The translations under genes were made by a program, and so were the position numbers. From contig CAJFCJ010000003.1 of the NCBI GenBank assembly GCA_904063045.1, positions 1,054,001 to 1,118,000 on the forward strand: 64,000 nucleotides of DNA. Reading direction: 5' to 3'. The stretch comes from Dimorphilus gyrociliatus (Eukaryota; Animalia; Annelida). Below, one piece after another: positions 13,320 to 63,966 of the stretch. The notes under the pieces are model-generated. The model was not told the origin of the DNA. It ran no database searches and saw nothing but the letters and a program-made list of their open reading frames with translations. Position 1 is the stretch's first letter; every line of letters starts with the position of its first letter.

Positions 13320-15950
13320 ATGAATTGCTGTTCAAATAAGGTGAATAAGATTTTTATTCTAATCTTAAATCAATTTATCTAATACGATTATTATCAGTAA
13401 ACTGCAAAAACTAGTAGCATTATCTTTGTCTTAATAAACATTAATATACCGCAAAAGAATTAACATTTTCATACTAAATAATATTGCAGGATATTCTAAT
13501 TTTCTCCTTATTCTTTTTTTATTTATTCTTTTTCTTCTCTTTCGTTAAATTTTTATGAGAGAAAAAAAATAAGACTTTTTTCTTTTTTTTTTAAAAAACA
13601 AAATTGTTCTCTTTCTTTTTATTCTTGAAAAACAAAATGAAAATCTTTTCTTAAGTAAAAAAGGAAGAAACAGTTTTTTAAAATAAAAAAAAGTGAAATA
13701 TATGCATTACCGGTTTTTTCATCTGTTGCCTTCCAAGTTTCTATTAACCAATGATGAAGTACCAAAAATTTATTATTGTTTGCAGTCGTCGATTGGCACT
13801 GCAAAAGGCGCGGCTTAATATTTAATGTTTTGAAGGTGCATATATACCATATAGTATGAACTGCTTTACGAAAACGGTAAATATTATAACTAAAATATCA
13901 ATATTTCAGTCTTGTTCATGTTTTTAATTCTATTGTTTTTTTTTATTTTCCATCCATAAGATTGTCTATTTTCTCCTCGTCCCCCCCCTTTTTTTTGCCT
14001 CTTGTCTTTCCATGACAATTTGTCAGTTTCTGTCTCTCATTCTCTGTTTGTGTCTGTCTGTCTCTCTTCTATTTCTTTAATGTCGAAGAAGAGAACTATG
14101 TAAGAATTCTCTTGCTTGTAGGATTATCCTTTTATTTACGTTTACGCCTTCATTGTTATAAATGAGGAGATATATTGCATATTGCCGTATATATATGTAC
14201 ATAGTCGAACTGGCTTTAGTATGAACTACTTTATGAGTGTAAAGCGAAAAAAAAATAAGATTTGATTATTGCGGATTAAATCGAATATAGAAATATAAGG
14301 ATATGCCCTCTAAAATTGATTCATAGCCGAGATTCATTGCCAAGTAAAATTATTATATAGAAAATATATAGCACAGTATACGGTATACATTTATACAAGA
14401 GACTGCTGATGCGTCATCAATTCCTCTACACCGTCGATCAGTACGAGATTATGGATTGTCTGATTTTTTTCTTATATATCTGTAACAAATGACACCTTTA
14501 TACCTATTTATTCCGTTCCCAATTTATCCTTTATTCGTCATCATTTTTAACGTGCGGTTCTTTGCTTCTTTTTTTTCCTATCATCATATTTTTTTAAGAC
14601 GGAAAAAATATTCTTTTTTTTTTCAACTATTGTTCTATTGTTCTAATTCTCCAGCTTAAACCTCATCTATATTCCCAATATATATATTTCCTCTTTATCC
14701 GCCCCTTTTTGCCCCTGTTTCACACCTCTCCTTCTATTTCTTCTCTCTCTCATTTCTTTATTTCTTACTCTGCCGCCCACCCTCTCTACCCCTCAATAAA
14801 TCCGACCTTTCATCGCCTACTTTTCTTATCCTAGCCCTACAGTAACCCTTCTACTGCTCAACTCTTTCGAATCTTATTTTCTCCTCTAGGCCTAAATACG
14901 CTATTTTATTGTTAGAAAGAATAGATTTAGCTTCCTCCTCTATCCCTCTATCCCATTGTCTATTTATTACAAAACCTAAGGGTGTGATGTGTACTCTACG
15001 ACGCTTATCGATTAATTATACTCATATTAAGAATAGTTTGACAGAATTAACAAGGAAAATCTTTAATATGTCTTAGTGAAGGAATACAATAAATATTTAA
15101 GAGAAACGTATAGAAAGATAAAATAACAAGGAAATTGAAACCTTTTTCGTGGTTAATAAAGAGAAAAAAAAGAATGACACGAGCAAGAAATTGAAAAAAT
15201 GAACAATTAATAAAATGTCTTGATAGTATAGCACTAAAATAGCCTGATATTAGGTTTGCGTATTTACAGTAGAGTATATAGACTATATACGTGTATGTGT
15301 ACTGCATATCGAGTATACTGAATGTAAAATAATTGTTACTCATTTTTGTTATCATCAACGCTATCATCTGGTCTATATTATTTAGAGTAGAGAACTTTTT
15401 GTAATCTTTAATTTAATAAAAGAAGGAATAGAAAGGAAGAAAAAAAGACGGGGTGAAGGTAACAGAAAAAGACAGATAAAGAGAGAGAGAGAGTAGAAGC
15501 AAGATAAAAAGAAAGAAATGGAAAGATACAAAAACACGCCACCTGCCTTTTATTTTTGTAAATACTTTTCAAAACAAGTCAAAAATTTTCAATGGCAAAT
15601 TAAGACATAAAAGAAATTAACAAAGAAATAGAAAGGAAAAGTAAAAATATAAGAATAATAGTATTATAAAGTTTTATAACATTTGAATATATATCCTTAT
15701 ATATACAACTTGACAAGAGATAATAAGCTATATAAAATATCTTTCCGCTGTCTTATTGATTTCTTCGTAATTTTCTAGGCGGAAGCGAATTAAACGCTTT
15801 CGACGTTTGTCATTAAACTGGGACAATGATAAAATAAAAATGAGAAACATTCCAGATAGAGTGCCAGAGCAAACGGCAACTTTGTTTTCTTTTCCTTATT
15901 TTATGTATATAGTATTATTGTAAAGAAAATATCCTTATACTGTATATACA

Positions 15951-15985
<35 letters not shown>

Positions 15986-16997
15986 AAAATAGTTCAACTG
16001 CAAGGTTTGTTTTATGACAAATTCAAATAGGTTCTAATGAGCGAATATACCTAGATTTTCTTAATAATTGAATTGAATCGTAATTGGTAAATCTCCCTTG
16101 TGAGATAAATTTTTACAATTCCACTTGTTGATGATATAATTGGATTTGTTTTTAATAATAATATCCATATACTATTTACTTAATCATATAATTAATTTTT
16201 TCCTTTCTATTGATATAACCAGATCGTTAATAAGTTAATAAATTATTATTAATATTTTGCGTTGTTAGTATTTCTAAACGCCTGTTTAAGATGACAAATG
16301 TATAGATAGATTGATAGATATATACTGTATACTGTATATACTGTTATATGTACCAAGTCGGTGAGTTATTAAGATTATTAGGTACAGAGTAAACGTACAT
16401 AAGTGTACAGAAAATGGGAAAAATTTATATAAATTATCTTTCATAAACCTTAATCTTCTGTATAAAGATATATATGTATCTTTAAAAAAAAAGAAAAAAA
16501 AACTAATATAAATTTATTATTATCCAGTTCGTGTTTAGTACTTAGGTATTATCCTTCTTTCATTTTCTCTCTCTCTCTCTCTCTCTCTTTTAATGCGTAA
16601 TATATTGTATAAATCACTATGTCCACAGTATATATATGTATACATTTTTATATACAGTATACGTTGAAATATTATTTGAATGAATTATTACAAGAAATTG
16701 AATTATAGGCCTATGAGTAGAAGAAAAATATTCATAATAAATATTGAAACTTCCTTAAAAAATACAAGTAATTTCCTGTATATTGTAAAATATACATTTT
16801 GATAAACTTAACAGAAAGAATGAAGGAAAAGTAGAAAGTTTAGTTGTTTTTTTAAATTATATAATTTAATGTCTCATTTGCATAATATTTATATATAATA
16901 ACTTTATTATATAACATAAAATGTCAGTTTTTGTCCCTTTATCTATTTATTCTTTTTTTTTCTTATTTTATTTTACACATAAACACACACGTATTCC

Positions 16998-17030
<33 letters not shown>

Positions 17031-17417
17031 TTCTTTCTCCCTTTTCGACTTCTTTCCATCTCTGTCCATTGTATTTTGTACCGATTTTTTTAGTAATATA
17101 TTACATAAAAAACAGTTCATTAATCATTTCAAAAATCGTTTTCCCTTTTTACTGCTTGTGTTAACATTTACATGCACTTGTTAGGTGAAATAGGCTGAAT
17201 TTGTACTCGGTTTCGGACGTATTGTTTTTACAAACAATTGATTGGTTATATATACTTCTTACTGTCAACTTTATCTTTTACTGAAATATATATTAAGCCG
17301 TATTTCTGTTTCTTTAAGTTTATGTTTTTTTGTTATTATTTGTTCATACTAAAATAGATGTTTTTATTTTTGAGTACTCATCACCCCCTCCCCCTTTTCC
17401 GCCCCCTATCCTCCCTG

Positions 17418-17469
<52 letters not shown>

Positions 17470-18581: not shown

Positions 18582-18617
<36 letters not shown>

Positions 18618-21600
18618 GAGAGAGGAGAGATCGGTAAAAAGGGAAGAAAGTTATATAATATCAATTTTTTGTTATAGGAATATATGTTTGTTTTATTTTA
18701 TTCTGTCAAGGTCGTTAATTGTCTAGCGCGTACAAATCGTGAATAATTTATTGCAAATACATATACACAAATTAACATTAGCCGATATATATTTTTCTTT
18801 CTAATAGGCTGTGGCGCCATTTCGCAACCGTTTTTGTACGGATTCTCGTTTGGAAATGGACGATCTAATTGATAACATGAAATCAGCAAGCAGTAATGAA
18901 GTATACGACGTAAGTTAAGCGTTTTAATCTATTTATTAATTATTTAATGGTAGAGGGAAAAAAATTTTCTCTGTAGAAGAGAAAAGCCATTGACAAATTA
19001 TTCCATTCATTTGTTACATTCGAAGTATTACAACTGTTATTTAACAAACTGACAAATATTTGTCTATTTTTTTGTTATTATCATCATCCTTACTGAATAT
19101 ATAATATGGATAATATGAGTCAGTTTGTACTTCCTTGTTTTCTACTTGTTTATTTACTCAAGGCTAAGTAGTAATTAAAAGAAAGTAAATTAATTTGTAC
19201 AAATGCAGTATGCGTACTTGAAAAGGAAAGTAAGAAATATTTCGTAAACAATTAATATATTTATTTATTTTAATAATAGAATAGAAACACCTTAGAAATA
19301 ACAAAAAAACAATATCTGCTCCATGTTAGTTACATATCTTCGTCTATAAATTACATTATTACCGTTACGTATAATAGTAACATTAACCGGAAGTTACTGT
19401 TGCCATACTTTCCCCAAGTTCCTCCCTTGCACATTCATTATATGTCATATATATTATAATATACATTTCGTTTTATTTCCTTCTTTCGTATTTCAGTATC
19501 TTTCACCTCGCTAATTAAAATTAAATATAAAATATAATAATAATGAAGTTTGAGAAGAGGAAGATATAGTCCCTTTTCCAAATATCTTAATAAAAATCTC
19601 TCTTACTCTTAGCTTTTACTCTTTCGTCTCTTTCTCTATTTATCTCTGTCTATCTATGTATATACTGTATATCTACTTTATATATATTATATATTTCTTA
19701 ACTTTACTCTGTTAACTCTTTACCCTCTTTTCTTCATATTTCATTTAATTTATAGTCTAGGCCATTAATAAAGTCAACAAGTAATTTTAATTGAGTAAAT
19801 CGTATCTCTAATGAATTCTACTTCATAGTCGATATAGATCAATCAATTTATATTAAATGAAAAACAATTCTCTTACCAATATTTTCCCATAATAAACAAA
19901 CAATTATGATCAATAATTATAGAGAATGTTAAAAATCATGAATATTTATAAGAAATACTAGAACCAAAAACAGATAGTTTTGTTTTTGTTTTTATCTATC
20001 AGGCAGAAAATAGTTCCTTTAGATTATATTAATTCTTACTATCTATCTCTATACTTTTCTATATAAATCTCTCATATCTTATTTAATTATTTAATATCGA
20101 ACTAAAAAATTCACCTCTACCCACTGTCAGTCTTTATTGAGTCAATTAGAGTGACATCATGAAAAAACACCCGTTTATTTATTGTATACAAAATAGCTAA
20201 ATAGGAAATTGTAAAGCATTAGGGTTAGGTGAAAATAGAAAAGGATAGGGGGAGGAATACACGCTAAGTAGATATAAAAGTGAATAATAATTCATTTCTT
20301 TTTCATTCATATTTTTCTTCTCTTAGCATAACTAGTATAACTGTGTTGTTGTTTCTTCTTATTATTATTAATACTTTTAATAGACGAAGAAGTTGACGAT
20401 GCCATTGATTTTTATAAGAGAAAAAGCAAGGAACAATTATATATAGATATTTTATTTAAATATGCTTTTGTTTAATTCTCTTTTAAAAAGAAACATAAGA
20501 AAAAGAACAAATAAAAGAAAGAAAATTTTCTCTGTAAAGTTATTTATTCAACTTTTTTTTTTAGTTTTTTCAATTTTTCTTTCTTATTTACTTTACTAAT
20601 TTATTTTTTTTTTCTCTTTCTTCCAAACAGAATAATATTATAAACTTCCAAACGGGTCAGCATCAATGGTATCCAACGTCTCATGCTAGGCCTACTTACT
20701 GTAACGTCTGTAGAGAAGCGTTATCAGGCGTCACTTCTCATGGTTTATCATGCGAAAGTAAGTTGTTTTAGTATATTTTTCTACGTAGAAAATTAAAGAA
20801 ACTCTTTATCACAACCTTTAAAAAGTTGTTTGATAATATTTTAGTTGTTAGCAAGGTTCTTTCCGTGTCTTTTTTTTAATCACTTTTTCAGTTGAACGAA
20901 AGAGGAAAATTGTTAAATGTCTTTAAAAGGCTATTAGTAAGAAAAGTAATAGTAGCGATATTAGGATATAAATTTACTGAAAAAATTAAGATAACTATTA
21001 TTATTTTCATTTTTATATTCATAAAAAATTCATTGAATGACCAAAGGAAAAGCGGAAATAAAAACCATTCAAAAATCATTCAATATACTTTTTATAAAAA
21101 TTTAATAAAGCAATTTATGTAGCGAGAAAAATTATTATTCTGTTTTATTGATAATTGTTTACTACATAATATATATATATATATATATGTACAGTATATG
21201 TTTATTCGAATGATTACATAACTATGAGTAGAGTACGTGTTTTGTTAAAATAATAGCAGAGAGGTAGGAAAGAATGTATAAATTTTACATAAATATAAAC
21301 TTGAATGGCAGTTCAAAAAAACTTTAATTTATTATTATTTTGTTAATATAAACATAAATAAATAATTTATTTCTAATTGTTTTATAAAACTTTCTTTCTT
21401 AAAATTATGTTTTTTTCTGAAAAATGTCACTATCTACATTCTATTTTTCTTTAATTCTTTTTTAATTTTGATCTAAAAAAAGACACAAAAAATGGTAAAG
21501 GAAGAATTTTTTTTACCATGCGTGACAGTTTAATGATATGTACTTTTATTTTTTTCCGGCTTTTCACTTTTTCTCTCTCTCTCTCTCTCTCTGTCTATCT

Positions 21601-23072: not shown

Positions 23073-23103
<31 letters not shown>

Positions 23104-24746
23104 CATATAAAAAGTAAGTAAATAGTAACAAAGGAGCTAATGTCAAAGGCCATTTTTCATTGCCTTGTAAAGAGTTGTGTAATTTTCCATATTGCTCCAA
23201 ATATTACTTGTAACACTTTCTTCTTATCTTATCGTTATTAATAACAAAATAGGAATAGAAGAAAAAAATGAATAATTAAAGTCTGTTATTTATTACAAAA
23301 GTAGAGTATACAAGTAGAAAAAGTATTTATTCAAAGTATATTTATATAGTATTGAAGATAGGTTGAATTCAATATAAATTGCTTAGAAATAGTGAGCAAG
23401 TTATTAAAACTAAAGCAGTAACAAACAAAGAAAAAACTGGTTATAAAAGAGGAAAAATATTTTTCTCCACCTTTAGAAAGTTGAAATGCCTCATCAATGG
23501 CTTGAAGGAAATTTACCAGTCAGCGCCAAGTGTCTAGTTTGTGACAAACCTTGTGGTAGCGTCTTAAGGCTACAGGATTGTAAATGTATCTGGTGTAAAG
23601 CTACTGTTCATACAAATTGTAAAGGAAAATTGGATAAAGTGTGCAGTATGGGACCTTGTAGTCGTCTTATTCTACCACCTACAAATATATCAGCCGTCGA
23701 TTTGGATGAGATGTGCAAAGCGAGAAGCTCACCGAGATTGGTAGAACCTCTTCTTGTATTCGTTAATTCGAAGAGTGGTGATAATCAGGGAGTCAAAATG
23801 TATAGGAAATTCAAGCGTATTTTGAATCCAGCTCAAGTTTTTGATTTGATCCGATCAGGACCACATTGCGGGTTTGTATTATTGTTCTTTTGTTTCTTTT
23901 TTCATCAATTGCATTATCCTTTTTTTTCCTCGTTCCTTGATTTCGTTAAGATAAAACGACAAACAATAACAACAATAACGGCTCTTCGGTAATGGAGCTT
24001 TCTAAAATACAATCTAAAAATACCCATACAACCAATTTCGTTTTATACTATTAGTATTATTCAGTTTACCAGAGCGTCACTCTACTGACGGTCCATAGTA
24101 TTCTTTATTTAGCTGACCATTTACCAAAAATAGAAATAATTTTTTTTGACGTCTATACTAAGCAATGTTTGTCACCAGCCAACAGTATTATTCAGCTATG
24201 ATTAGTTGACTATAATCAGCCTATATATACACAATAAAATACAGCGAACGACTATTTACCTACATGTTAATTTCTACGGGTCACGGTCAAACTAATTTAT
24301 AACAACATTGCATTATGACTGTAGAAAAATTAATGAATTGACTTGAAAAACAATTTAATTAGCCAATCAACGATGAATTTTCATTAGTTATTGCAAAATA
24401 TAGATATTTGAAACATTTACACATTTAGAATCATGTTTAAATGTTATCTTTATAGAAAAGATAACTTTTTATTAGGCTATAAATTAAGTTAACTATATAG
24501 CAATACTATATATTTTAACTATATGTCTATAAATACAATGGTATTTATATATATTTGTATGTATGTAAATAGTTCTTTAGCAACACTCTTACTCCATCTC
24601 CTAACCTACTCGCAGTAAAAGATGACATTTTGACCCCTAAGGCATTTATTGCAAAGTATTAAGTTATGCATAGGAATATATAATATATTATATATATAAA
24701 TTTATATACTTTATATATACAGTATATAGGCATTATATATAATTTG

Positions 24747-24781
<35 letters not shown>

Positions 24782-27700
24782 AGAAAGTTATAAACTTGTG
24801 CCAAACTGGTAATTAAGGCTAAAAAAAGTCGCCTTTTTACAAACGTTATTTATAGATAATAGTTTTATTTGGCCTACAGCCATTTTTGTAAAAAACAAGA
24901 AAAAAAAGTTCTAAAAATAGTCGTCTTTTTTCCGTATATAGCCTATTCCTTTGGCCAAAATTATCCAATTCTATTCACATCTTCTCAGCTTTTTCCTCTA
25001 ATTAATCTATTATTTAGTGGTTATTTTTTTCCTGAATTTCATTGTCCAACTTTACAAATGAATAATAAGGCCTAAGTGACTGATTTAAGAGATGTATTCA
25101 TCAAGTATAGTGGATTATTCATTATTAATAATTAGGTAATGTCTTTTTCTTTACCTTTCAGCCTAAGACTCTTTCAAGATCTGCCTCATTTCCGAATTCT
25201 AGTCTGCGGAGGAGACGGTTCAATTGGCTGGGTTCTAAGAGAAATAGATAAAAAGGATTTGATAAACAAGTGTCAAGTCGGTGTTCTACCATTAGGCACT
25301 GGTAATGATTTGGCTAGGGTCCTAGGTTGGGGATCGGCTTTTGATGATGAAGCTCAACTAGCTGCCTTTTTAGAGAAATTAGATCACGCCCAAATAAAGA
25401 TGCTCGATCGATGGAGTATTCTAACGTACGAGGGTTTAATGCCTGATCCGAGAAAAGATTCCCTAACAGATGACGCAATAACTTTGTATGAAGATTCCGT
25501 CGCAGCTCATCTGACAAAAATTGTCCAATCAGATAATCATAAAACTGTAATAATGTCGGCCAAGGTCTTGTGCGCTACGGTCAAGGATTTTGTGGAAAGG
25601 ATAGCTGAAATTGAGGAAGAGGAAGAAGAGTCCTCTTCAAAGTGTGCTGCGCTTCAAGAGAAACTCGATTCTTTATTGAATACTCTTGAGGCGGAGAGTC
25701 GTGAGGTTAAGAGGGAAAAAGAGGACCTTATGGAGAAAGAGGAAGAAGTAAAGAGAAAAAAACTAATGAGTAGGGCGAATAGTCTAAAGAAAGCAGTTCG
25801 CGAACTTATCGAACATGCCGAAAAACGTGAGCTATATTTTCATTCTAAAATAATAGCGGATATCTTTGAAAATAACGGAATTAATTGCAAATTAAACATT
25901 TGCGCTTAGCTCTTCTTTTCTCCTAACCTTCTACTATCTCTCCCTCGCTACGCGCCCCTGCGCGTGTATGTATGAGACTGTGTGTGTGTGTGTGTGTGTG
26001 CATGTACGTATGCGAACGTGAGAGTATCTGTATAAAGCCCATCTATCTATCTCTCTCTCTCTTTATTCTCATTTCTTCCCACGCTCTTTTCTCCTTTCAA
26101 AATCTTATTTAGTGATGGCAAATTGGGTAGATAACTCATTAATACCTTATATTACTTTAAAAGGAAAGATTTTATACAGTAGCGCCATCTTTGAGTAACG
26201 TAAACTAAACCGACTTTGCAATAGAAAAACAAAAATAAGCAGTAAGAATAATTTAAATAATTTAGCAAATACTAAGAATCAAGTGCCTAGATGATATCCA
26301 GGCAATTTTCATCTTGTATATAAACAAATAATATCTAAATGAGACTATATTTCACATATAATGGGGATATAAATTCCAAATGAAATATTATTTTCGAAAA
26401 AGATAAAGAATGAAAAAAGAAATACTCAAATCAAAAACTAGGTCGTTGAGGCTATTTTCTTAGAAAAGGATAATAAAATTTCTAGCGCACGCACTCGGTA
26501 ATATCATGTTAATAAATATGCTATACTATACTACTTGTTAAAGAAATATTGAAGAAAAAATTTCCCTCTCTTATTTAATATAGGCCTAGATAAGCAAGAA
26601 GAAAAAGAAAAAGAAAAAAGGACAAATAATTATTCGTATATAGAATTTTAAAAGGGTTATTAAATTACAATTAATTTTTCTATAACATGATATATATGAA
26701 AGATTAGTTAATATACCGTATATTATATTTAAATTTGTTAAAAGGAGAATGAAGGATAGTAAAGTTTAAGTAAGAGAATGGGAATGGGAGACCATCTCTC
26801 CTATTTAAGGTTAGAGTATGTTTCTTTTACAAAAAAAAAAGAAAAAATAGAAACAACGGATTCTGTTTGAGATGAAAGTGAGAAGATTTAGAAGGGAAAG
26901 TGTCTATTCTCATTTCCTGGAAATGCCCAAGTGGAAATTATATAATTATAATTTTACTTATCCTTCACTTATACCCCTCTTCAGTCTACTCTTGCCACTT
27001 GTTATCAAAATTTTTTCTTCTTTTCCTATTCTTCCATCTCTTCACATCATCTTTTTATCCACTCTTTATGTTTTTTTTTTTTAATTATTAAATATTTATA
27101 GTAATCTTTAGGATAAAATAAGAAAAGAGAGAAAGAAAGGAAAAAGAAAGTAATTTTTTCCTTTCTTTCTTCCTTCCTTTTCCCCTATTTGCGCAAATGT
27201 TTTACAAATGTTTTTTGTTTGTAAGTTATTAGCTGAGATGTATGTTTTTCTATAATTAAAAAAGAAGTATTAGCTTTTAATATATACATATACTGTATAT
27301 ATATATATATATATCTATATTGCAGTTGTCGATGAGCAAAATGAAATAAATAATGAACCAATTTGTCGAAGTTCTGCTCCGTCACCACCTGCATTTCAAA
27401 TACTACCACCTTCTCCATCCCGTTCTACGATTGATTTTCAATCGAATAATCCCGAAAAATTGATCATGCCGGAAGGCAAACAATCGTTATCTGTACCGAT
27501 GAGCAAATGGCGTGTAGACTCTGATTCTTCATATACAGATAGTGACTACATGTCATCGGGAACTAGCAGCCCTTATAGATCTCCGTCTCATTCCGCTAGT
27601 GAGTCTTCCTATTTCTGTTTTATGGAATCATTTTTAGATAATGATCTTAAGAGTGTTATTACTTTTCGAAATGTATATGCCTGTCTTCTTTTTATAGCTT

Positions 27701-28620
27701 CTAGTCACTCTCCTTCTCCAATTCGCTCACCACTGAAATTTGTACCACCCTTTGGGCCACCGGATGCCGATCCGAGAAAACAAACGGGATCGCCTACTAA
27801 TTCAAATTTCCCCATACTCCCAGGTAGAGGAAATAGAATGAAATTTATAGATTAATTTTTCACTATACTTCTTAGGAAACCCACTATAATATCAATATAT
27901 ATATGCTACCGTTTATATACTGTATATATACTGTATATTGTATATTAAATTTCTTTTATTATATTTAATAGCAAACTACGCACAAAGACAAGCAGAGTCG
28001 TTAAATATTCCAGGGAAGGGGCTAGTTAGTAAAGTTCTTCTACAAAGTATAGCACCAGTCGTGACTAGTGCGTTCCTGTCAAGAGTTGAACACGATGTGG
28101 ACTTGTAAGTATCCTAAAAACGAAACTAAACAACTATTACGAAAAATATTTCAGAGAGAGTTTTTCTGCAAAAAACAAATCAATTAATCATTTTTATTAA
28201 AATAACAATAGAAAACTATTAAAAACAAACCATTTCTTTAACACTATAACTACCACATTGATAAACTGAAATTATGAACCAGGGACGAACGTTGTATTAT
28301 GAATAATTACTTTGGTATAGGAATAGACGCGAAAATCGCGCTTGATTTTCATACTAAAAGAGAGGAACATCCCGAAAAGTGCAGGTAATTAATGGGCAAT
28401 TATTATATTTGGATATTTTCTTTGTCGTTCAGATCGTTGTACAACGAAAAAAGCGTCATGAATAATTATTTCGGAATTGGTATCGACGCCAAGATCGCAT
28501 TAGATTTTCACAACAAACGCGAAACGCATCCGGAAAAGTGCAGGTTTATATTTGAAGATTTTGAATGAACGCCTTCGCTTTCCTTCCTCCTACTACACTC
28601 TGTTGTATTAATATTTTTAT

Positions 28621-28651
<31 letters not shown>

Positions 28652-29111
28652 GTATATACTGTATATATATATAAATATGCTTAGTTAATTTTTTTCCTTA
28701 CTAACTTGATTAACAAAGAAAAAAGAAAGCAACATTCTAGCTTATATACATTATATTAGTTATTAAAGAAACGCTACCTGACAGCTTTAGTTGTGTTTAA
28801 TTTTTAGCGACATTTTAGCTGTATGAGAATGAGCAAAAAGCCGTCACTTTTCAAATTTTTACCTCATCAGTTTCGTTATTTATTTACTCCAATATATGTG
28901 TGTTTTTCATTTTTTTTTGGTACACAAGTTATTACTATCATCATATCTTTTCTTAATAATTAATTAATTAATTATTTACTTGATAGTACTCTTTTTGATT
29001 TACATATTTCCTTTACAGCTTTATATATGTATATATATATATATAGATATATATATATATATACTGTATATGTGTGCATATAAATTCATACATATATAGT
29101 CTATATATATA

Positions 29112-29151: not shown

Positions 29152-31699
29152 TTGTTGTTGTTGTTGATTCGGTTTGATAGATTTGACTAATTGGTGTTTG
29201 TTAGTTTTTATTTATTTTGATTATATATTAAACTTAATATTTAGATTAAATACCTATTCTTTAATACTTTAATAGAAGCCGAACAAAAAATATGATGTGG
29301 TATGGAGTCTTAGGAGGAAAGGAAATTATGCATAATACCTATCGCAATTTGGACCAAAGAATTCAGTTAGAATGTGATGGACAAAGGATTCCTTTACCTA
29401 GTTTACAAGGAATTGTAGTTCTTAATATATCAAGGTAGATTTTCTTTTAACCTTGATATGCCTAGTATATCAAATACATTTGATTTATAGTTATATGGGA
29501 GGAGCCAACTTTTGGGGTACGAAAGGCGATGTACGTTTAAAAACACACATATTTAATTTATAAACTAATTTATATAAAGATTTCTAAAAATAAACATAGA
29601 ATTTCCGGCCGCCTTCTTTTGATGATAAGATTTTAGAAGTTGTCGCCATATTTGGTAGCGTTCATTTGGGCGTTTCTAAATTTGTTAACCTACAACATCA
29701 TAGAATAGCTCAATGCAGGAGTTTAAAAATAACTATACTGGGTGATGAAGCTGTACCTGTTCAAGTTGATGGTGAAGCATGGCTTCAAAATCCTGGTTTT
29801 ATAAGAATTAAGCACAAGAATAGAGCTCAAATGTTAAGTCACGATAAAATATTCGCCGAAGCTCTTAGATCTTGGATGAAAAACGAACGAAGATCCAGCG
29901 AACAAACAGATTCAATCTTAACCGATCAAGAAGTATACGTTCTTAATGATTTCGTTTCCGTAACTGAGAGATTTACAGAATGGTATAAATTCCGTTTAAA
30001 ATACTAAATAACTCAATATTTCAATATTTTTACAATAGTTTGAAAATGTTATCGTCATTTACAACGTTTATAATGGAAGATTTAACGCCGTTGATTGTTC
30101 AAACACAAGGTTTCTTAAGGAAGTTATATTGTGAAAATGGTGAAAAAATGATTGAGGTAGGCCTAACAATGAAGATTTTATTTTATTTATCATTTTTATT
30201 AGTATTATATGTACCTAATGTTTTATTTGTACTTCTTCTTCTTCTTCCTCTTCTTCTTCTTCCTCTTCTTCTTCTTCTTCATTATTTTTTAAACAATTAC
30301 TTATTCTTTCTATCCATTTCTATATTTTCATTATTTACTTGTATAATTTCAGTACGGTACTTCTCAGGTAAATCTTATGTGTAAAACAACAAAGTAAAAA
30401 CAGTATACTGTTTACTCTTTACAGTATAGACGATATTTGCTGTTGTATTTTACTCACCTTTTCTTTTTATTCCCATTCGTCTTTCCCTTTATTTTTATTT
30501 TAAAAATTGTTGTTCTTTATCATTTATTATCATTGTTTTCTATACTTTCTTTTATATCTGCCCGTTAAGTTTTGCATTTGCATTTCTTTCCGATTTGTAT
30601 ATAGCATATATACAGTATATATATATAAATTTATATATAACTGTATACTGAATAATCTAATTTATTATATTAGTTCAGTTAAATTATAATATTAATAAAA
30701 TACTCGAGTTATTTATTTCTTTAACGAATCATGATTAAATCAAACAGCCGGCAATTAGGAGTCAGGTTTCTGATCTTGTTAGCAGTGTTACCCATCTCTT
30801 CCATAAATCAGTTCAATTACTAAACGAGAATAGCCGTGAATTAGTAAGTAATCATTACATATATTACTAATAATCTACGTTCCATATTTGTAATTAATAA
30901 CGTCTATTTAATTGATTGATACTCTATTTTTAGCAACTCTCATCCCAAGCTGATCAACAATTGCATCAAGCTTTACAGGAGATGGATGCAGAGATGGGTA
31001 GGGTTCATCAAATAGGAGGCCTACCCCATCCATATATATTAGACGATGTTCGTATAAAATTCGCATTAAACTGATTAATAATAATAATAAATAATGTCTT
31101 TTTCGTTATTCCCCAACTGATAAACAGCATGAACATCCAAAGAAACAGAAAAAGTTCAAGTTTGGCCCCTGGTTTAAACAGAGAAAGAGGGAAAAATCTG
31201 ATACACCTAAAGCACCAGATGGTAAATAGGTTACTTTCTAAATGAATTTTGAAACATTATGCCTTAACTTTATTATTTTCAGTGTCTAATGTTGAAAATT
31301 GGACTATCGATGAAGTTGTTCAATGGCTAAGCAGTTTCGGTTTTGTTGAATATGCCGAAAAATTTATTTCACATGAGATTACTGGTAAAGAATTAGTACA
31401 TTTGGAAAGATATGATCTAAAAGTAAGCATTTATTTTCATACCCTAGCCAATTATCAACCGATAGATGGAGCTAACAATTTAACTATTTATTTTGATTGT
31501 TAAAATACGCCATCTATATTACTTTTTATGTATTATTTATTTTCTTTTTCCATTATTTTTTTAGGATCTAGGAGTCTCAAAAGTGGGCCATTTAAAACGT
31601 ATGCAAAACGAAATAAAACACATGAGACATCAAGTTCAGGAAAGAGATAAATTGCAGAAAAACAAAACTCAAATGCTCGACATAGCTATTTCTTTTTAA
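13320..31699 (+). CDS. DGKH: Type II diacylglycerol kinase (delta/eta-like): PH remnant, C1a, C1b, split catalytic domain, SAM; ~1109 aa
   Basis: Exons: 13320-13340 (alternative first), 18808-18909, 20631-20757, 22680-22786, 23477-23871, 25162-25826, 27326-27598, 27698-27823, 27972-28104, [28283-28384 or 28433-28543], 29276-29434, 29491-29530, 29600-29982, 30039-30156, 30748-30843, 30934-31047, 31128-31221, 31283-31422, 31565-31699. All introns are GT-AG and phases are consistent (3330 nt with exon A). Motifs: [119 protein letters not shown]. Cannot be assigned to DGKD versus DGKH. Confidence 0.95.
13856..13876 (+). CDS. Candidate alternative first coding exon 1b of DGK (MNCFTKT)
   Basis: ATG AAC TGC TTT ACG AAA ACG|gtaaat: 21 nt, phase 0, same as exon 1a (ATG AAT TGC TGT TCA AAT AAG|gtgaat). 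Both are preceded by a shared actgcaaaagg word (13281 and 13798). Confidence 0.65.
14221..14238 (+). CDS. Candidate alternative first coding exon 1c of DGK (MNYFMS)
   Basis: ATG AAC TAC TTT ATG AGT|gtaaag, phase 0. tagtatgaactacttta matches 1b tagtatgaactgcttta at 16/17 nt. Confidence 0.45.
17418..17468. repeat. (CT)n(CA)n compound microsatellite
   Basis: Read directly from the sequence; intronic in DGK. Confidence 0.9.
18561..18612. repeat. Interrupted (GA)n microsatellite
   Basis: Read directly from the sequence. Confidence 0.85.
25979..26001. repeat. (TG)n microsatellite
   Basis: Read directly from the sequence; DGK intron. Confidence 0.85.
28283..28384 (+). CDS. DGK duplicated exon A (102 nt; (L)[33 protein letters not shown](R))
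   Basis: aaccag| ... |gtaatt, phase 2/2, open frame, canonical start of the DGK accessory catalytic half. Confidence 0.9.
28433..28543 (+). CDS. DGK duplicated exon B (111 nt; (L)[36 protein letters not shown](R))
   Basis: tttgtcgttcag| ... |gtttat, phase 2/2, open frame, paralogous to exon A. Confidence 0.9.
30232..30280. repeat. Imperfect (CTT)n trinucleotide repeat
   Basis: Read directly from the sequence; in a DGK intron, and the source of the poly-Leu in spurious ORF 30040-30384. Confidence 0.85.
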
Positions 31700-40937: not shown

Positions 40938-42832
40938 GTAAATAATCATTTTAATAGTTGTTAGAAATCTATGTAACTTGTAAAAATAGTAAGGTTTAAT
41001 AGGAAAATAAAGTCAATTTAATAGTTTTCTTTTATCTTTTCCCTCCTTCTTTTCCCAGTAAGAAAACTTTTTCGTTTGTTTGTTTACTTAAGAAATGTTT
41101 TTATTCTATCTTTTTTGAAACTTTTTCACCTTTCCCCTTCTTCTTCTTCTTCTTCATTGTCTTCTTTATAAATTTTACATTATCAGTATATATACTGTAT
41201 ATCAACTTAGTACAAACGAAAACAGGAATAAACATACTAATCCAGGCAGAGAGCTATAAATTACTAACATCTCTTTAATGGTAAACATATTTTTAAAATT
41301 TCAACGGGTTTTCAATTAAGGCCTAGGAAAAAGAGTAGAAAGATCTTTTCTTCTTATCCCTATCGCTCATTCTAAAAGTGAAGACTTATTGAAGAAATAT
41401 TAATAAATTTTTGAGGGAAAGGAATAAAGGATATACCCTCTTATGTAGACCTACTCGTGGAAAGTTTCTATACGTTTAAATAATATACCGCTTTGATCTC
41501 AATAAAACCTCGGTTTAAACCTAAGTTTATGGGTTTCTATAACATTTTAGCTATGTATATCCTATAATTAGACGGCGAACATAGGAAATTCAACATGTGG
41601 AAAAATTTAAATAAAGAGAAGAATAGAGTTTAAAAAGCTTGTTGCACGCCATATACAAAGTACCATCCAAATTCATAAAAGGAAGTCAAGAATACTCGAT
41701 TTTAAAAAGTTCTCTTTGAAAACACCTTTTACCTTATCATCTAATTAGAATATAGTCAAAGAAAGAAAGAAGGAATCCAAAGAAAGAGTGAAAGATAGAA
41801 GTAAAGATAGTTATAGTCTGGCATTTTGAATTTAAAGTGAGAAGGAATTTAAAAAAATATTCCAATGTCTATCTCTGTTTTCATTCGACGCTAAGTAATG
41901 GATAAACTAATCTTTAAAGGCACATTAGCCAATTCTTTCTTCTTTAAGGATAAGGGAAGTTAAGCAAGGGAGTTTTATGTTCAATTTTTATTGAAAAACG
42001 ATATATTTACACTATTTTGCAGATATATCATACAACTCTCGATCTTTTCCCTACTCTGTATATTTATAATAGTCTTATGAGTCTTGATCTCTATTTGATA
42101 TAGGAAAAAGGCGAGTATGGGGAAGCAAGTTGTTTATTCCGTTTTCCTGGTACTCTTTAGCCATTTATGACTTTAGAATCACTCTTCGTGATGTCTCTTT
42201 CCCTTGCTCTCTCTCTCTCTCCCTTTCCTAAATAAGCTAAGGTGGGGGGAATAAACACTTGTCTTATTCAATAGTTTATTTAACTGTCCCTTTTTTCTTC
42301 TTCTCCAATAACCTTGTTTAACAGGATAGAATGTAAATAGAGTAATAAAGAAAAGAAAAAGCTCTGTTTATATATGCGTTTATTATTTTCTTTTTTTGTA
42401 TAGGTAGATAATCGTCGCTATTAATTAACTATAATAACCAACAGTAAACGCTCTAGGGTTATTTTAAAGTTGCTGATTATTACGTGATCGGGCTAGGAAG
42501 CGTCGACTATTAACAATTTAATCAGCGGGGCGTAAATTATCTTTTCGAAAGGAATTTTTAACACCCCTCCCGTCCGTTTTCTTACTCTATTAAAGGTATA
42601 TATATATAAAAATAGGCTTATGTATATTTATTATACTAATTTTACCAAGGATATATATATATCATTAAAAATAATTCTATAAATATATGTTGATAGAATG
42701 CTGAGTCAAGTTCTCTTCTCCTCTCCATTAAATCGAGTACAGTTTCCTTTTCATCTTTTCAGATTACGTGACAAGCTAACGAGTGGAAAAAAACTTGAAA
42801 AGAAAGAAGGAGGAAGAAATCAAGAAACCTGC

Positions 42833-45800
42833 ATGTTCCAAATCATTCTTCTCATCTATATTTCCGGCGTTTCGGCGTTAGAAAAACTATATACAATTCC
42901 AGAAAATAGCCAACCAATTAAACTAGTGAATTTAAATGAACTGATTGAACCTTTTAGAAGATTTTCAGAAGATGAATTAAAAAGTGTAAAATTTTCCATT
43001 CTAAATAGTAAGGATGGGGCAAGATATAAAAATATGTTTGAGGTCAAAGGTCGAGAGTTATGGTCCAGTGATATAGATAGAGAATCAATAGAGGACTGCG
43101 TAAATCAAGAGTTTTGTTATCTGAAGTTTGATTTAAAGGGCAGCGATGGTAAAACAGCTGATATCGCTTCGATACGGATACAAATTTTGGACGAAAACGA
43201 TAATATTCCAAAATTTAACGGCTTTCGATCTGAAAATTATGACCTTAGCATATCAGAAGGACAACCAGTCTCTGAAGCGTTAAACTTACCCTATTATGCA
43301 GTTGATAAGGATAGCCCCGAAAACGGTATTGATTATTATACCCTTAGCGGTTCTGATAAATTCGAATTGGTAAATGGAAAATTACAACTCTTATCTAAAT
43401 TGGATAGGGAAAGAGAGGCAATCCATCATATTGTTGTTAAGGCTATCGATAAGGGCACACCGTCCCTAACTGGAACTCTTTTAATCAGGGTATTAGTAAC
43501 GGATTACAACGACAACGCCCCGAAATTTGAGAAGGAAACTTACGAGGTGAGCGTCTACGAGGATGAAGTACCCGGTAGCGTAATACAGCTCATTAAAGCT
43601 ACCGACAAAGACGAGGGGAAAAATGCAATAGTCAGTTACTCCATAGATCTTTCGCAATCTGACGAAGAAGTTGATGAAACGTTTCGAATTAATAATAAGA
43701 CAGGAGAACTAATCCTTACAAGTCTGTTGGATTACGATGAGAGTAAGAGGAACTACAGGATAATGGTTACCGCCCAGGATAATGGAGCTGATTCACTCAA
43801 GAGTCAGGCTCTTGTCAACGTTAAAATATTAAACGTCAATGATAATAAACATAAAATCTCTGTCATAAAAGAATTCAGAATCGTTGAGGAACAAGATGAA
43901 GATACAGAAGCGGGAGAAATCTATGTTCACGATAAGGATATAAACGATGGAAGTTTTAATTGCCTCATAAATGATACAATCAACTTCCACCTTGTACCAT
44001 ATAGCATATCCGGCTACTATCGTCTACTTTCTGCTAAAGTCTTTGATAGAGAAGAAAAATCGGAATTTCCGATTAATCTAACATGTTTCGATTCAGAGAA
44101 TTTACCCGAATCTTTAATTACTATAGTTAAAGTACTCGATTTCAACGATCACGCACCAAAATTTAATCAGACTTTCTACGAATTTACTATAAAAGAGAAT
44201 GATCCGAATCCTCTTGGCTTGTATTCTGTATTCGCTACAGATGCCGATGAAGGTTCCAATGCAATTATCTCTTATTCAGTATCCGGAACAGATCTAGTTT
44301 ATGTGCATTCAACTACTGGACAACTCTTTCTTAAAAGCTCATTGGATTTCGAACAAATTCAAACTCTTGAGTTTAAAATTGAAGCAAGGGATCACGGTTC
44401 TATTCCAATGGCTTCTCAAGTTCCGGTTTCTATACAGATAACGGACTTGAATGATGAAAGACCGGTGTTTGTCAAAGATGTCTTTGAGATGCATGTATTG
44501 GAAGAATCGTCCCCCACTGAGTATGTTGGCAAGGTTCTAGCAGTTGATAGAGATCAAAGAGAAGAGTTTAGGCGCCATACGTACGAACTCCTCGGATCAA
44601 CAGACCTATTTACAATCGATGAAGTTGGCAGAATTTATACAAAGAGAACGTTTGATAGAGAAATTCAAGACCTTTACGAATTCAAGGTTAAGGCCACTGG
44701 CGTAAAAGATCCTTCTTCTACTTCTACTGCTTTAGTTAGCATTAGTATAGAGGATATTAATGATCACAAGCCCATAATTGACTTTCCAAATCCCTCAAAC
44801 AGCACTATTACTGTTAAATCGAATTTAGGGAAAGATCGAATATTTGGCAGAATATTGGCAAGGGATAGCGATATTGGAGTGAATGGGGCATTAGTATATG
44901 AAATTATAGCCGGAAATGAGGACGATATGTTTTACGTTCATGGAACAACTGGTACTATAGCTGTCAACGATGACTTAAGAGGAATTAGGCAGTTGAAGTA
45001 CCTTCTTAAAGTTAGAGTAACCGATTCCGGCTCGGAACGAAAATTTGCTACATCCAACCTTACAATTATCGTTTTACGATCGATTGGCGACGGAAGTTCT
45101 GCTGGCGGTGACCCTTCTTTCAATCTCATGATAGTAGTTGCCCTCTCCTCCGTAACATTACTCATTGTAGTGGTTCTTTTGTTCGCCATCTTTCTAGTAA
45201 GAAGGAGACAACGACTCTTAGAAGAACAAGCTGCTAAAGATCGGAAGGAAAACGTCCTCGAACTGGAGAAAGTGGAAATTCACGCCAGAGTTGAAGATGG
45301 AAAGATAAAAGCTGATACTCAATTTCGGCCTCTTTCTTCTTTTTATCAAGTAAGTGAAATTTCCTCTATTTTTCAATTTAAACCTATGTTGCATTATTAA
45401 TTTTTATTATACGATTACGGAAAAGACAATAGTCATTAAAAATAGTCTCGTCTATTTCAAGTAAATAACAAAAAAAAAATGCCGAGTTGCTGTACTTAAT
45501 CACGTTCCTGTACTGTATAATTTGTAAATGGGAACAAACTTAGCAGTCTTCCCTTAGGCTATAAGGCAGTCTTCATTCATGCATGAAAGAAAACGCAAAC
45601 TTGACGGAATTACGCAATAGGCGGTTCCCTCATTAAAGCACCTGCGTTTCAACTTTCGCCGTGTTTGGCGGTGATGTAACGTAATCGAATCGAGTGGAAC
45701 GATGTTGTTTCGTATGACGTAACATGAGACGCGTAAATCGAAGGCAAATATATAGTTTAGTATTGTAAATAATTCAAATTTACCCACAATTCTGGTACAA

Positions 45801-48232: not shown

Positions 48233-48267
<35 letters not shown>

Positions 48268-51026: not shown

Positions 51027-51065
<39 letters not shown>

Positions 51066-57877: not shown

Positions 57878-57880
<3 letters not shown>

Positions 57881-57914
<34 letters not shown>
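57881..57914. repeat. (TA)n microsatellite
   Basis: Read directly from the sequence. Confidence 0.85.
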
Positions 57915-57918
<4 letters not shown>

Positions 57919-61820: not shown

Positions 61821-62185
61821 ATTGACAGAAGCAATTAAAAATATTCTTAAAATCCTTAATTAATTATAAACAATTTTAAGGTAAAAACCAGGCTTAAAAT
61901 CTCATTGTACATCTACTCCCATTTTCCTTATTTCAACATGGAAGCCTATAAACACGTGACCAACATTCAGCACTTAAATATAAAATATGAAAAGATGTAA
62001 TATTTGAAAAATCTCAAAATTATTTTCAATCATTTTAGCTATTTTAAAACACTTCTAAAGAATTATTTTTAAAGTTTTGTATTGTCCATGATCGAAAAAT
62101 TGTCACCACAAAATTAAATTTCATTGGTAACCAGTCTATTGATACTTAGAGGCTCTTGTTTCCTGTTCCGGTCGTCGTGTACAAA
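61821..62185. promoter_or_regulatory. Compact bidirectional promoter / 5' UTRs shared by RNF13-like and TMED-like genes
   Basis: Only 365 nt separate the two divergent start codons; contains CACGTGAC at 61953-61960. Confidence 0.7.
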
Positions 62186-63966
62186 ATGCCCGTAAAGATA
62201 TCTCTAGTTCTTCTATATTCTATGTTATACAGCTGTTCGGCTTTATATTTTCATATAGCCGAAACAGAGAAAAAATGTTTTATCGAGGAAGTTCCTGATG
62301 AAACTATGATTGTCGGTAAGATTGTTAAGATTTCTATTAGATCTTTCGATCTCCAAATACGGCTTCCTTAAACATCACGTTCTTAAGGAATCTTTGCGAA
62401 TTTTTATAATCTATGCCTTAATACTATGAGAGTCAATACAAGATTGACCCTTTTCCCTCCAAAATATCATTTGACAAACAAGTAAAATTTGCGCCATCTG
62501 CATTTATATGAGAAGAAATTCAACGTGGATCAACAGATGACACAAGCATATGTTTTTACTTGACTATTCATATAATAATAACACTATTTCAGGTAAATAT
62601 CGTGTTGAAATGTTTGATAAAAACCGTAATACATACGTGGAAACCGTTAGTGGACTGGGGATGCACGTTGTCATAACAGATCCCGAGCAGAAAGTTGTCC
62701 TATCAAAAGTAAATGTTTTTTCATTTTTTCTTATTTATTAACAGGCAAATACAAAGTTCTAAGATTCGATAAGAACATAAACGATTTCGTTACAACAACA
62801 ACTGGATTAGGAATGCACGTCGAAATCAAAGATCCTTCCGAATCAGTTGTATTGTCAAGGGTAAGGGAGAGGAATAAGTTGTAGAAAATATTTATATTCC
62901 CTCCTTCTCTATCCGTAGCCTAGATTGATGGGTTGTGCAGAATTTTTTATTTATATTATTTATGGTTCGGTGTGGGTTACTTTGCATTCCTTTTTCCCGT
63001 ACAACGAATGTTAACGAATATCTTAGAGACCATAAGATATTTCAACAGATATTTTGCGTGTAGCAGGTTTTCAGTTGTTTTGAAAAACGAAAGTGTTCGT
63101 TTCATAAAAGATAGAAATTCTACATCGCCAATTTTTTTAATGATTTGCATTTATCACGATAAATAGAATATTTTAGTTAAAAAATGTAAATTTACAATAT
63201 AATGTTAAAATGTAGAAAGAGGGTGTACAGAGAAGAAAACCTTTATATGATAAGATTTATTGCACAGTTATAGTTAGTTTTTTAAACTTGCATGACCAAT
63301 TAGGAAATATTTATTTCTTTTATTTTAATTTCTTTGTAAATTAGCAACAGTTTAAAATAGTAAACAAACTATTAAATTATATTATAGCTTGTTTATTTTA
63401 ATTTACATTCAGTACGATAATTTAAAAAAAAGAAGAATAAATAAACCAGCATATTCCCTGTTTTTATTTGGTTTTGAGGAAAATTTATTCAAACTATTTT
63501 TAATCGAATGATGCAATTAGACATGTTTTACAAAATTTTTATATATCAATTTTTATCTCTTTAGACATACGCTTCCGAAGGCCGATTTACATTTACATCA
63601 CATTCGGCTGGAGAGCATACAATTTGCCTTCATAGTAATTCAACTGCTTGGTTTGGCGGTGGTCAACTACGTGTTCATTTGGATATTGAAATTGGCGAAC
63701 ATGCCAACGATTATCAACAAATTGCAGCTAAAGATAAACTAAGTGATTTAGAAACAAGAATTAGACAACTTTTGGATCAAGTAGAGCAAATAACTAAGGA
63801 GCAGAATTATCAACGTTATAGAGAAGAAAGATTTAGGCAAACTTCGGAATCAACTAATCAACGGGTTTTGTGGTGGTCCATTGCTCAAACTGTTATATTG
63901 TTGGGAACTGGATTTTGGCAAATGAGACATTTGAAAGGTTTCTTCGAAGCAAAAAAATTGGTGTGA
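62186..63966 (+). CDS. TMED9: p24-alpha family cargo receptor (TMED4/TMED9, eclair-like), 215 aa; exons 62186-62315, [62593-62708 or 62745-62860], 63565-63966
   Basis: Signal peptide, then [25 protein letters not shown] (GOLD start), [32 protein letters not shown], coiled coil, [22 protein letters not shown], and C-terminal FFEAKKLV* (FF plus KKxx). Cannot be assigned to TMED4 versus TMED9. Confidence 0.95.
62593..62708 (+). CDS. TMED duplicated exon 2a ([39 protein letters not shown])
   Basis: tatttcag| ... |gtaaat, 116 nt, phase 1/0. Confidence 0.9.
62745..62860 (+). CDS. TMED duplicated exon 2b ([39 protein letters not shown])
   Basis: ttattaacag| ... |gtaagg, 116 nt, phase 1/0. Not in the ORF track. 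Confidence 0.9.

What the first reader, a model, noticed from the sequence alone, without database searches (positions are those of the whole stretch)
13320..62860. Window-level pattern: exon duplication used in place of gene duplication, with sub-minimal spacers as the exclusion device
Seen: three tandem exon duplications in two unrelated genes within 50 kb. Reconstructed constitutive short introns measure 56, 56, 59, 60, 61, 61, 62, 66, 68 and 69 nt; the two inter-duplicate spacers are 48 and 36 nt. Established: a donor-to-branchpoint distance too short for spliceosome assembly is a known mechanism of mutual exclusion. Inference: this genome may use a sharp intron-size floor systematically to build MXE pairs, giving paralog-like diversity (DGK delta/eta, TMED4/9) from single-copy genes. 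This predicts many unannotated MXEs genome-wide.
Basis: partly seen in the sequence, partly recalled or inferred. Interest (0 to 1): 0.8.

Follow-up and report, generated by a model that had tools for sequence, protein, structure and literature searches.

The report
Swappable exon pairs with tiny spacers
Two genes of the small marine worm Dimorphilus gyrociliatus each carry two alternative copies of one exon set only 36 and 48 bases apart, which is a real but already known way of making two proteins from one gene, and at least one of the pairs is far older than this worm's genome.

Summary
The window is Dimorphilus gyrociliatus. A type II DGK gene has homologous same-phase exons at 28283-28384 and 28433-28543, separated by a 48-nt GT..AG spacer. 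A p24-alpha (TMED4/9-like) gene has exons 62593-62708 and 62745-62860, separated by 36 nt. Both pairs are saturated at synonymous sites and under purifying selection. Four short DGK introns were re-derived (56, 56, 61, 69 nt).

- **TMED pair:** it is old. The same exon pair, in the same order, occurs in Owenia, Capitella, two nemerteans and two molluscs. Spacers there are 45 nt (Capitella) and 494-2443 nt (the others). In all seven species both exons are 3n+2 long, so the frame rule is the conserved lock. The public annotation already holds both Dimorphilus isoforms.
- **DGK pair:** its exons are 3n, so the 48-nt spacer is the only lock visible.
- **Precedent:** short spacers as a steric lock are established in C. 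elegans (5 of 29 clusters) and in mammals.
- **Third duplication:** it is a set of candidate alternative first micro-exons, which needs no spacer logic.

No read-level RNA data could be obtained, and the intron-size floor was not measured. The scan has noted similar short-spacer pairs (21-46 nt) elsewhere in this genome; I did not verify those.

The parts
13320..13340 (+). Candidate alternative first micro-exon 1a (ATG, 7 codons, MNCCSNK), followed by GTGAAT
   Evidence: Read. Similar to 1b, including about 45 nt of upstream sequence (alignment A4). Use in DGK mRNA is not shown.
13856..13876 (+). Candidate alternative first micro-exon 1b (MNCFTKT), followed by GTAAAT
14221..14238 (+). Candidate alternative first micro-exon 1c (MNYFMS, 18 nt), followed by GTAAAG
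   Evidence: Shares about 20 of 22 bases with 1b around the ATG.
27972..28104 (+). DGK exon upstream of the pair. It ends in phase 2 (TT), with donor GTAAGT at 28105.
   Evidence: Read. Its phase fits both exon A and exon B.
28283..28384 (+). DGK exon A (102 nt, 3n). It encodes the start of the DAGK accessory domain (..[33 protein letters not shown]).
   Evidence: 84% identical to the Tubulanus orthologue.
28385..28432 (+). 48-nt GT..AG spacer between DGK exons A and B
   Evidence: The only yTnAy branch-point match lies 8 nt from the donor. The next usable A is about 29 nt from the donor (read by eye).
28433..28543 (+). DGK exon B (111 nt, 3n; ..[36 protein letters not shown])
   Evidence: 86% identical to the Priapulus orthologue.
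29276..29434 (+). DGK exon downstream of the pair ([11 protein letters not shown]..), acceptor phase 2
29435..29490 (+). Constitutive 56-nt intron
   Evidence: Flanking exons are homologous to orthologues.
29531..29599 (+). Constitutive 69-nt intron
29983..30038 (+). Probable 56-nt intron
   Evidence: The downstream exon is colinear with orthologues at weak similarity.
31222..31282 (+). 61-nt intron before the SAM-domain exon
   Evidence: SAM domain found.
62186..62315 (+). TMED (p24-alpha) exon 1, ending in phase 1
62593..62708 (+). TMED exon 2a (116 nt, 3n+2), alpha type, used in DgyrCDS2162
62709..62744 (+). 36-nt GT..AG spacer between TMED exons 2a and 2b
   Evidence: The TTCAT branch-point candidate lies 15 nt from the donor.
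62745..62860 (+). TMED exon 2b (116 nt), used in DgyrCDS2161 and DgyrCDS2160
63565..63966 (+). TMED last exon (rest of the GOLD domain, coiled coil, TM, stop)
62591..62598 (+). AG|GTAAAT at the start of exon 2a. This acceptor is also used as a donor.
   Evidence: DgyrCDS2160 (P0122) reads through to 62592 and joins 62745.

Best explanation
These are ordinary homologous mutually exclusive exon pairs in Dimorphilus gyrociliatus. They are seen here in a lineage whose introns are short, and the spacer between the two copies has ended up at about the smallest size that still holds a donor, a branch point, a pyrimidine tract and an acceptor.

TMED pair:
- It was inherited from at least the annelid ancestor, and probably from early Spiralia.
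- Its conserved lock is arithmetic. Both exons are 3n+2 long, so taking both or neither shifts the frame. In Dimorphilus, taking both gives a stop at codon 88, which lies 98 nt before the last exon junction.
- In Capitella (45 nt) and Dimorphilus (36 nt) the spacer is never removed as an intron in its own right. It has shrunk so far that U1 at the donor and U2 at the branch point (15-26 nt away) should not fit together. That adds a second, steric lock (inferred).

DGK pair:
- It is old but may be lineage-specific.
- Both exons are 3n. Double inclusion would be in frame and would duplicate the MNNYFGIG motif.
- The 48-nt spacer is therefore the only lock visible (inferred, not shown).

First micro-exons: they would exclude each other simply by promoter choice.

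That two such genes lie in one window is most likely coincidence.
For: Organism:
- TMED exon 3 is 100% identical to DgyrCDS2161.

Pairs:
- Homology, phase, lengths and splice sites are confirmed.
- Both copies of each pair are under purifying selection, with saturated synonymous sites.
- Both DGK copies are 78-90% identical to orthologues.

TMED:
- The annotated isoforms P0001 (2b) and P0121 (2a) differ only in exon 2. Splice variants in that annotation come from PASA transcript assemblies (PMC7854359).
- NCBI X1/X2 isoform pairs in Lineus, Tubulanus, Mercenaria, Liolophura and Biomphalaria, and two Owenia proteins, differ only in the same stretch.
- Loci measured in six species plus the window: the alpha exon always comes first, all exon lengths equal 2 mod 3, and spacers are 36, 45, 494, 542, 854, 1230 and 2443 nt.
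- Frame consequences were computed.

Intron sizes:
- The median intron is 66 bp in Dimorphilus and 57 bp in Capitella, and short introns are described as probably a pre-existing condition (PMC7854359).
- The shortest introns I could verify in the window are 56 nt.

Precedent:
- In C. elegans, 5 of 29 mutually exclusive clusters have spacers under the roughly 40-nt intron minimum, and all five are 3n. Fourteen of the 19 non-3n clusters rely on NMD (PMC4165533).
Against: - No read-level RNA data.
- For DGK, even the use of both exons is inferred from conservation only.
- The species' real lower limit of intron size was not measured. 48 nt is only 8 nt below the shortest intron verified here.
- The exon tree (39 columns) is largely unresolved. 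Deep orthology of the TMED pair therefore rests on position, order, length class and isoform annotation. Repeated independent duplication of the same exon is not excluded.
- No annelid DGK orthologue could be obtained.
Confidence: 0.66

Rival explanations
1. One reading: this genome systematically exploits a sharp intron-size floor as its device for creating and enforcing mutually exclusive pairs, so that exon duplication replaces gene duplication.
For: - Two pairs in the window have 36- and 48-nt spacers, below all verified introns.
- First-reader notes of this scan list further pairs in the same genome with spacers of 21, 28, 28, 34, 35, 37, 38, 46 and 46 nt. Those notes are unverified.
- The DGK pair has 3n exons and shows no other lock.
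Against: - The TMED pair predates the genome and has long spacers in five of seven species.
- A short spacer also occurs in Capitella, which has a larger genome (PMC7854359).
- The shortest spacer here sits at a 3n+2 pair that does not need it.
- The A/B differences do not match delta/eta paralogue differences.
- Candidate counts in flies (more than 200 genes) and C. elegans (138 genes) are of the same order as the 191 notes in this genome (PMC3923563).
Confidence: 0.2
2. The short spacers are a pure by-product. A stretch that is never spliced out on its own is free of the minimum-length constraint and shrinks under deletion bias. Choice and exclusivity are set entirely by other means: frame plus NMD, splice-site strength, and regulators.
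For: - The frame rule is conserved in all seven TMED genes.
- Short spacers appear only in the two short-intron annelids.
- DGK exon A has a weak acceptor and a strong donor, and exon B the reverse (read). That is typical of regulated choice.
Against: - For the 3n DGK pair nothing else visible prevents in-frame double inclusion.
- No convincing competing RNA stems were found around either pair.
- In C. elegans, spacers this short are never seen to be excised (PMC4165533).
Confidence: 0.3
3. One copy of a pair is a decaying relic, or the duplicates are an assembly artefact, so no alternative proteins are made.
For: No RNA reads could be laid. For DGK, no annotated isoform could be retrieved.
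Against: - Synonymous sites are saturated, yet pN is 0.13 for DGK (0.07 in the core) and 0.29 for TMED.
- All splice sites are intact.
- Both TMED exons are in annotated, transcript-derived isoforms.
- Both DGK copies are 78-90% identical to distant orthologues.
Confidence: 0.04

Closest known systems
C. elegans mutually exclusive exon clusters with intervening introns under 40 nt (egl-15 5B/5A, let-2 9/10, bet-2, gly-5, gly-6; Kuroyanagi et al. 2014, PMC4165533)
   Same: A short-intron genome. The spacers lie below the species' minimal intron size and are never seen excised. The exons are 3n long, as in the DGK pair here. Non-3n clusters rely on NMD, like the TMED frame rule.
   Different: The floor in C. 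elegans is measured (about 40 nt) and exclusivity was shown by RT-PCR in wild type and in the smg-2 mutant. Neither is done here. The TMED pair here combines a 3n+2 length with a very short spacer, whereas all five short-spacer clusters in C. elegans are 3n.
Mammalian alpha-tropomyosin exons 2/3 (steric interference between donor and branch point; from my own knowledge and as summarised in PMC4165533)
   Same: The donor of the upstream exon lies too close to the branch point serving the downstream exon.
   Different: In tropomyosin the intron is long and the branch point is unusually distant from its acceptor. Here the whole spacer is tiny.
p24-alpha (TMED4/9/eca-like) X1/X2 isoforms annotated by NCBI in nemerteans and molluscs, the two Owenia proteins, and DgyrCDS2161/2162
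   Same: The same exon, same order, same 3n+2 length class. The isoforms are identical outside that exon.
   Different: Spacers are 494-2443 nt in five species, against 36 nt here and 45 nt in Capitella. I found no paper that names this pair. Among the top-ranked papers, none used 'mutually exclusive exon' together with a TMED term.
Internal versus external paralogy (exon duplication versus gene duplication; tandem duplicated exon substitutions, PMC9741552; Irimia et al. 2010, cited there)
   Same: Homologous exon substitution as an alternative route to protein variants. Most such events are ancient.

Membership tests
Homologous mutually exclusive exon pair (tandem exon duplication) | Adjacent exons are homologous, of similar length and in the same phase | tested here: met
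   (82% and 59.5% aa identity). Lengths are 102/111 and 116/116 nt. Phase 2 and phase 1 starts.
Homologous mutually exclusive exon pair (tandem exon duplication) | Both copies have intact splice sites and are kept by purifying selection | tested here: met
   AG/GT at all four exons. pN 0.13 and 0.29 with saturated pS.
Homologous mutually exclusive exon pair (tandem exon duplication) | Each mature message holds exactly one copy | tested here: inconclusive
   TMED: three annotated transcript-derived isoforms each hold one copy, and none holds both.
Steric-hindrance exclusion (spacer too short to splice) | The spacer is shorter than the smallest intron the species can remove | tested here: inconclusive
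   36 and 48 nt, against verified introns of 56 nt or more in the window and a genome median of 66 bp. The actual floor was not measured.
Steric-hindrance exclusion (spacer too short to splice) | Lengthening the spacer permits double inclusion | not testable with these tools
   Needs a minigene experiment.
Frame/NMD-enforced exclusion | Exon length is not a multiple of three, so double inclusion or double skipping gives a premature stop | tested here: met
   TMED only. Lengths are 116/116 here and 110-119 nt (all 3n+2) in six other species. The stop falls at codon 88 on double inclusion and at codon 67 on double skipping.
Frame/NMD-enforced exclusion | The same feature, for the DGK pair | tested here: not met
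   102 and 111 nt are both 3n. A+B reads through without a stop.
Competing RNA structure (docking/selector) control | Conserved complementary intronic elements flank the cluster | tested here: not met
   Only short AT-rich inverted repeats were found. Cross-species conservation could not be tested.
Alternative first exons (multiple promoters) | Each copy has a start codon and a donor but no acceptor, and has its own transcription start | tested here: inconclusive
   ATG and GT are present in all three copies, and 1a/1b share upstream sequence. Transcription starts and splicing to DGK were not tested.

The most novel reading that the evidence does not exclude
In Dimorphilus, and perhaps in short-intron annelids generally, most homologous exon pairs have spacers collapsed below the intron-size floor whatever their phase. 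Steric exclusion would then be the default lock genome-wide, and the set of spacers together with true introns would give a natural calibration of the smallest intron this spliceosome can remove. In the TMED gene the choice may additionally run through a recursive-type site: the acceptor of exon 2a (CAG|GTAAAT) regenerates a donor that can discard 2a and reach 2b.
Probability: 0.25. Interest if true: 0.55.

Novelty: new member of a known kind. Interest (0 to 1): 0.33.

Why it matters
The two pairs add a lipid kinase and a cargo receptor to the list of genes that make two protein versions by swapping one exon.

The cross-species series for the TMED pair has the same exon pair with spacers from 36 to 2443 nt and an unchanged 3n+2 length. 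It is a clean natural experiment on which lock is ancestral (the frame) and which is added when introns shrink (the steric block).

If the short-spacer pattern holds genome-wide, this compact annelid would be a convenient system for measuring the minimal spliceable intron. The principle itself is not new.

Tried and rejected
1. **Read-level RNA evidence.** The look-up of sequencing runs gave one run of unknown kind. After that I sent no query holding those places to any search tool. My local scripts did read the whole window file as a BLAST subject.
2. **The Dimorphilus DGK protein and annelid DGK orthologues.**
   - The large HMMER search with the 256-aa exon returned no full-length Dimorphilus entry.
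   - A region search with the Priapulus orthologue was swamped by arthropods and vertebrates.
   - A profile of orthologues plus separate exon translations also listed no annelid.
   - Two cluster look-ups named no annelid.
   - Mollusc and nemertean isoforms all share one version of the exon.
3. **Sister-species contigs.** L005-L007 are about 82% identical at the DNA level, but they cover only 24598-26528 and not the pair.
4. **A tree of the TMED exon.** It is mostly unresolved at 39 columns.
5. **A window-wide ab initio estimate of the intron floor.** There are too few genes, and codon-bias discrimination is weak.
6. **The genome paper and its supplements.** They give the median intron size but no minimum.
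7. **Competing RNA stems.** Nothing convincing was found.
8. **Assembly artefact or pseudo-exon.** Rejected on divergence and constraint.


Full report
**What the window is.** The window is AT-rich (30% G+C). TMED exon 3 is 100% identical to DgyrCDS2161 of Dimorphilus gyrociliatus. On the + strand it holds:
- a type II diacylglycerol kinase gene with C1, DAGK_cat, DAGK_acc and SAM domains, colinear with delta/eta-like orthologues;
- a protocadherin-like ORF;
- a p24-alpha TMED gene.

**Check of the observation.** A self-comparison of all stop-to-stop segments gave only two significant same-strand tandem matches.
- DGK: exon A is 28283-28384 (102 nt) and exon B is 28433-28543 (111 nt). Both follow an AG and precede a GT. 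Both start in phase 2, which fits the upstream exon ending at 28104 with two bases of a codon and the downstream exon starting at 29276. The spacer 28385-28432 is 48 nt.
- TMED: exon 2a is 62593-62708 and exon 2b is 62745-62860, each 116 nt and starting in phase 1. The spacer 62709-62744 is 36 nt.
- Introns: four short DGK introns were re-derived, at 56, 69, 56 and 61 nt. A 68-nt candidate lies at 9690-9757. The gene also has introns of 90-732 nt.
- Third duplication: it is three similar ATG micro-exons at 13320, 13856 and 14221, each followed by GT. Their use was not tested.

**Both pairs are old and constrained.** Synonymous differences are saturated (pS 0.85 for TMED, above 1 for DGK). Non-synonymous differences are few (pN 0.29 for TMED, 0.13 for DGK, and 0.07 in the DGK core). 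Both DGK copies are 78-90% identical to orthologues from other phyla. This excludes an assembly artefact and a decaying copy.

**The TMED pair is inherited and already annotated.**
- The 90% cluster of DgyrCDS2161 also holds DgyrCDS2162. The two differ only in exon 2, carrying 2b and 2a respectively.
- Splice variants in that annotation come from PASA transcript assemblies (PMC7854359), so both exons are transcript-supported.
- NCBI isoform pairs in Lineus, Tubulanus, Mercenaria, Liolophura and Biomphalaria, and two Owenia proteins, differ in exactly the same stretch.
- I fetched six loci and measured them. The alpha-type exon always comes first. Every exon length is 3n+2 (110, 113, 116 or 119 nt).
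- The spacers are 1230 nt (Lineus), 494 (Tubulanus), 542 (Mercenaria), 854 (Biomphalaria), 2443 (Owenia), 45 (Capitella) and 36 (Dimorphilus).
- A tree of the 39 aligned columns is mostly unresolved. Mollusc beta exons group together (88/81), and Dimorphilus 2b groups weakly with Owenia beta.
- In Dimorphilus, double inclusion gives a stop at codon 88, 98 nt before the last junction. Skipping both gives a stop at codon 67.
- The conserved lock is therefore the reading frame. The very short spacer is a feature of two annelids that both have short introns: the median is 57 bp in Capitella and 66 bp in Dimorphilus, and the authors call short introns probably pre-existing.

**The DGK pair.**
- Both exons are multiples of three, so A+B would read through in frame. 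Retaining the spacer gives an immediate stop.
- No frame lock exists, and no competing RNA stems were found.
- The spacer holds a good pyrimidine tract. Its only yTnAy match is 8 nt from the donor, and the next usable A is about 29 nt from the donor.
- This is the arrangement expected for steric exclusion, and it parallels C. elegans, where all five clusters with sub-minimal spacers have 3n exons (PMC4165533).
- The two versions differ mainly in the residues just before the MNNYFGIG motif (DERCI against SLYNEKSV), plus two later residues. Vertebrate delta and eta are nearly identical in this stretch, so the pair does not mimic that paralogy.
- Both copies share residues that differ from the molluscs, nemertean and priapulid sampled here (GIGI and IALDFH), although each variant recurs in some other animals. 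Mollusc and nemertean isoforms show a single version of the exon. The duplication may therefore be lineage-specific, but I could not obtain any annelid orthologue to date it.

**How it most likely works.**
- Shown: the anatomy, the constraint, the TMED isoforms, and the cross-species series.
- Inferred: a spacer of 36-48 nt cannot be removed, because donor and branch point are too close.
- Inferred: for TMED this duplicates a frame lock, while for DGK it is the only lock.
- A spacer between alternative exons never has to be spliced out by itself, so it is free to shrink to the minimal set of signals. That explains why the shortest spacer here sits at a pair that does not need it.
- One extra detail. 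The annotated isoform DgyrCDS2160 reads through the exon 2a acceptor and uses the GT at 62593 as a donor to reach 62745. CAG|GTAAAT therefore works as both acceptor and donor, like a recursive splice site. Whether this takes part in choosing 2b is speculation.

**The window-level claim.**
- Recurrence is plausible. First-reader notes of this scan list other pairs in the same genome with spacers of 21-46 nt, and 191 notes mention mutual exclusivity. These are unverified leads.
- That number is of the same order as predicted candidates in Drosophila (more than 200 genes) and C. elegans (138 genes) (PMC3923563). If roughly 1% of genes carry such a pair, a few of the roughly 1300 windows would hold two such genes by chance (my rough estimate).
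- The two spacers share no sequence.
- The claims that the genome 'builds' pairs with the floor, that the pairs replace DGK delta/eta and TMED4/9 paralogues, and that they are unannotated are not supported for the cases I could test.

**Limits.**
- No reads could be laid, and places 28639-28680 were kept out of all later queries.
- The joined DGK and TMED models were not sent to any search.
- Frame consequences of joining exons were computed locally, without printing or searching the joined sequences.
- The profile search used separate exon references aligned to orthologues.
- The intron-size floor, DGK isoform usage and the age of the DGK pair remain open.

**Verdict.** This is a correct observation of two genuine alternative exon pairs with sub-50-nt spacers. 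The mechanism is a known one, and the genome-specific strategy is not supported. The most useful new result is the TMED series, which shows a conserved frame lock with spacer collapse in short-intron annelids.

Noticed in passing
window 62551-62598 and 62745: The annotated isoform DgyrCDS2160 (P0122) starts at an ATG inside intron 1, reads through the exon 2a acceptor, and uses the GT at 62593 (CAG|GTAAAT) as a donor to reach exon 2b. The site therefore has the form of a recursive splice site. Exon alpha does not start with GT in any of the other six species.
   Followed up: partly
L002 25516-25671 vs 27382-27525; L003 10631-10804 vs 12669-12812; L004 7619-7984 vs 8015-8161: The TMED genes of Mercenaria, Biomphalaria and Capitella show further internal duplicates of later exons (about 37-69% aa identity). 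These may be additional alternative exons.
   Followed up: no
L004 9464-14641 and L008 14858-15047: An EVC2-like gene lies tail-to-tail next to the TMED gene in both Capitella and Owenia (conserved neighbourhood). I did not look for it beside the Dimorphilus gene.
   Followed up: no
L005-L007 (Logan contigs of SRR23372229, SRR23372228, SRR31984831): Genomic contigs about 82% identical in DNA (94% in protein) to window 24598-26528. They come from a close relative of D. gyrociliatus and would be useful for dating the DGK pair if the right contig could be fetched.
   Followed up: partly
window 29900-30007: If the 56-nt intron at 29983 is not removed, the DGK frame ends at a stop at 30005. That would give a product without the helical and SAM domains, reminiscent of the SAM-less isoforms of vertebrate DGK eta (from my own knowledge).
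   Followed up: no
window 18667-18909: Only a short, weakly similar stretch (29-48% identity) matches the PH domain of DGK orthologues.
   Followed up: no
window 42698-45400: A single 900-aa ORF with at least five cadherin repeats and a transmembrane stretch (protocadherin-like). It is unusually intron-free for this gene-dense window.
   Followed up: no
window 28639-28680: A TA microsatellite in the intron after DGK exon B made the read tool refuse the whole stretch. It was kept out of all later queries.
   Followed up: no
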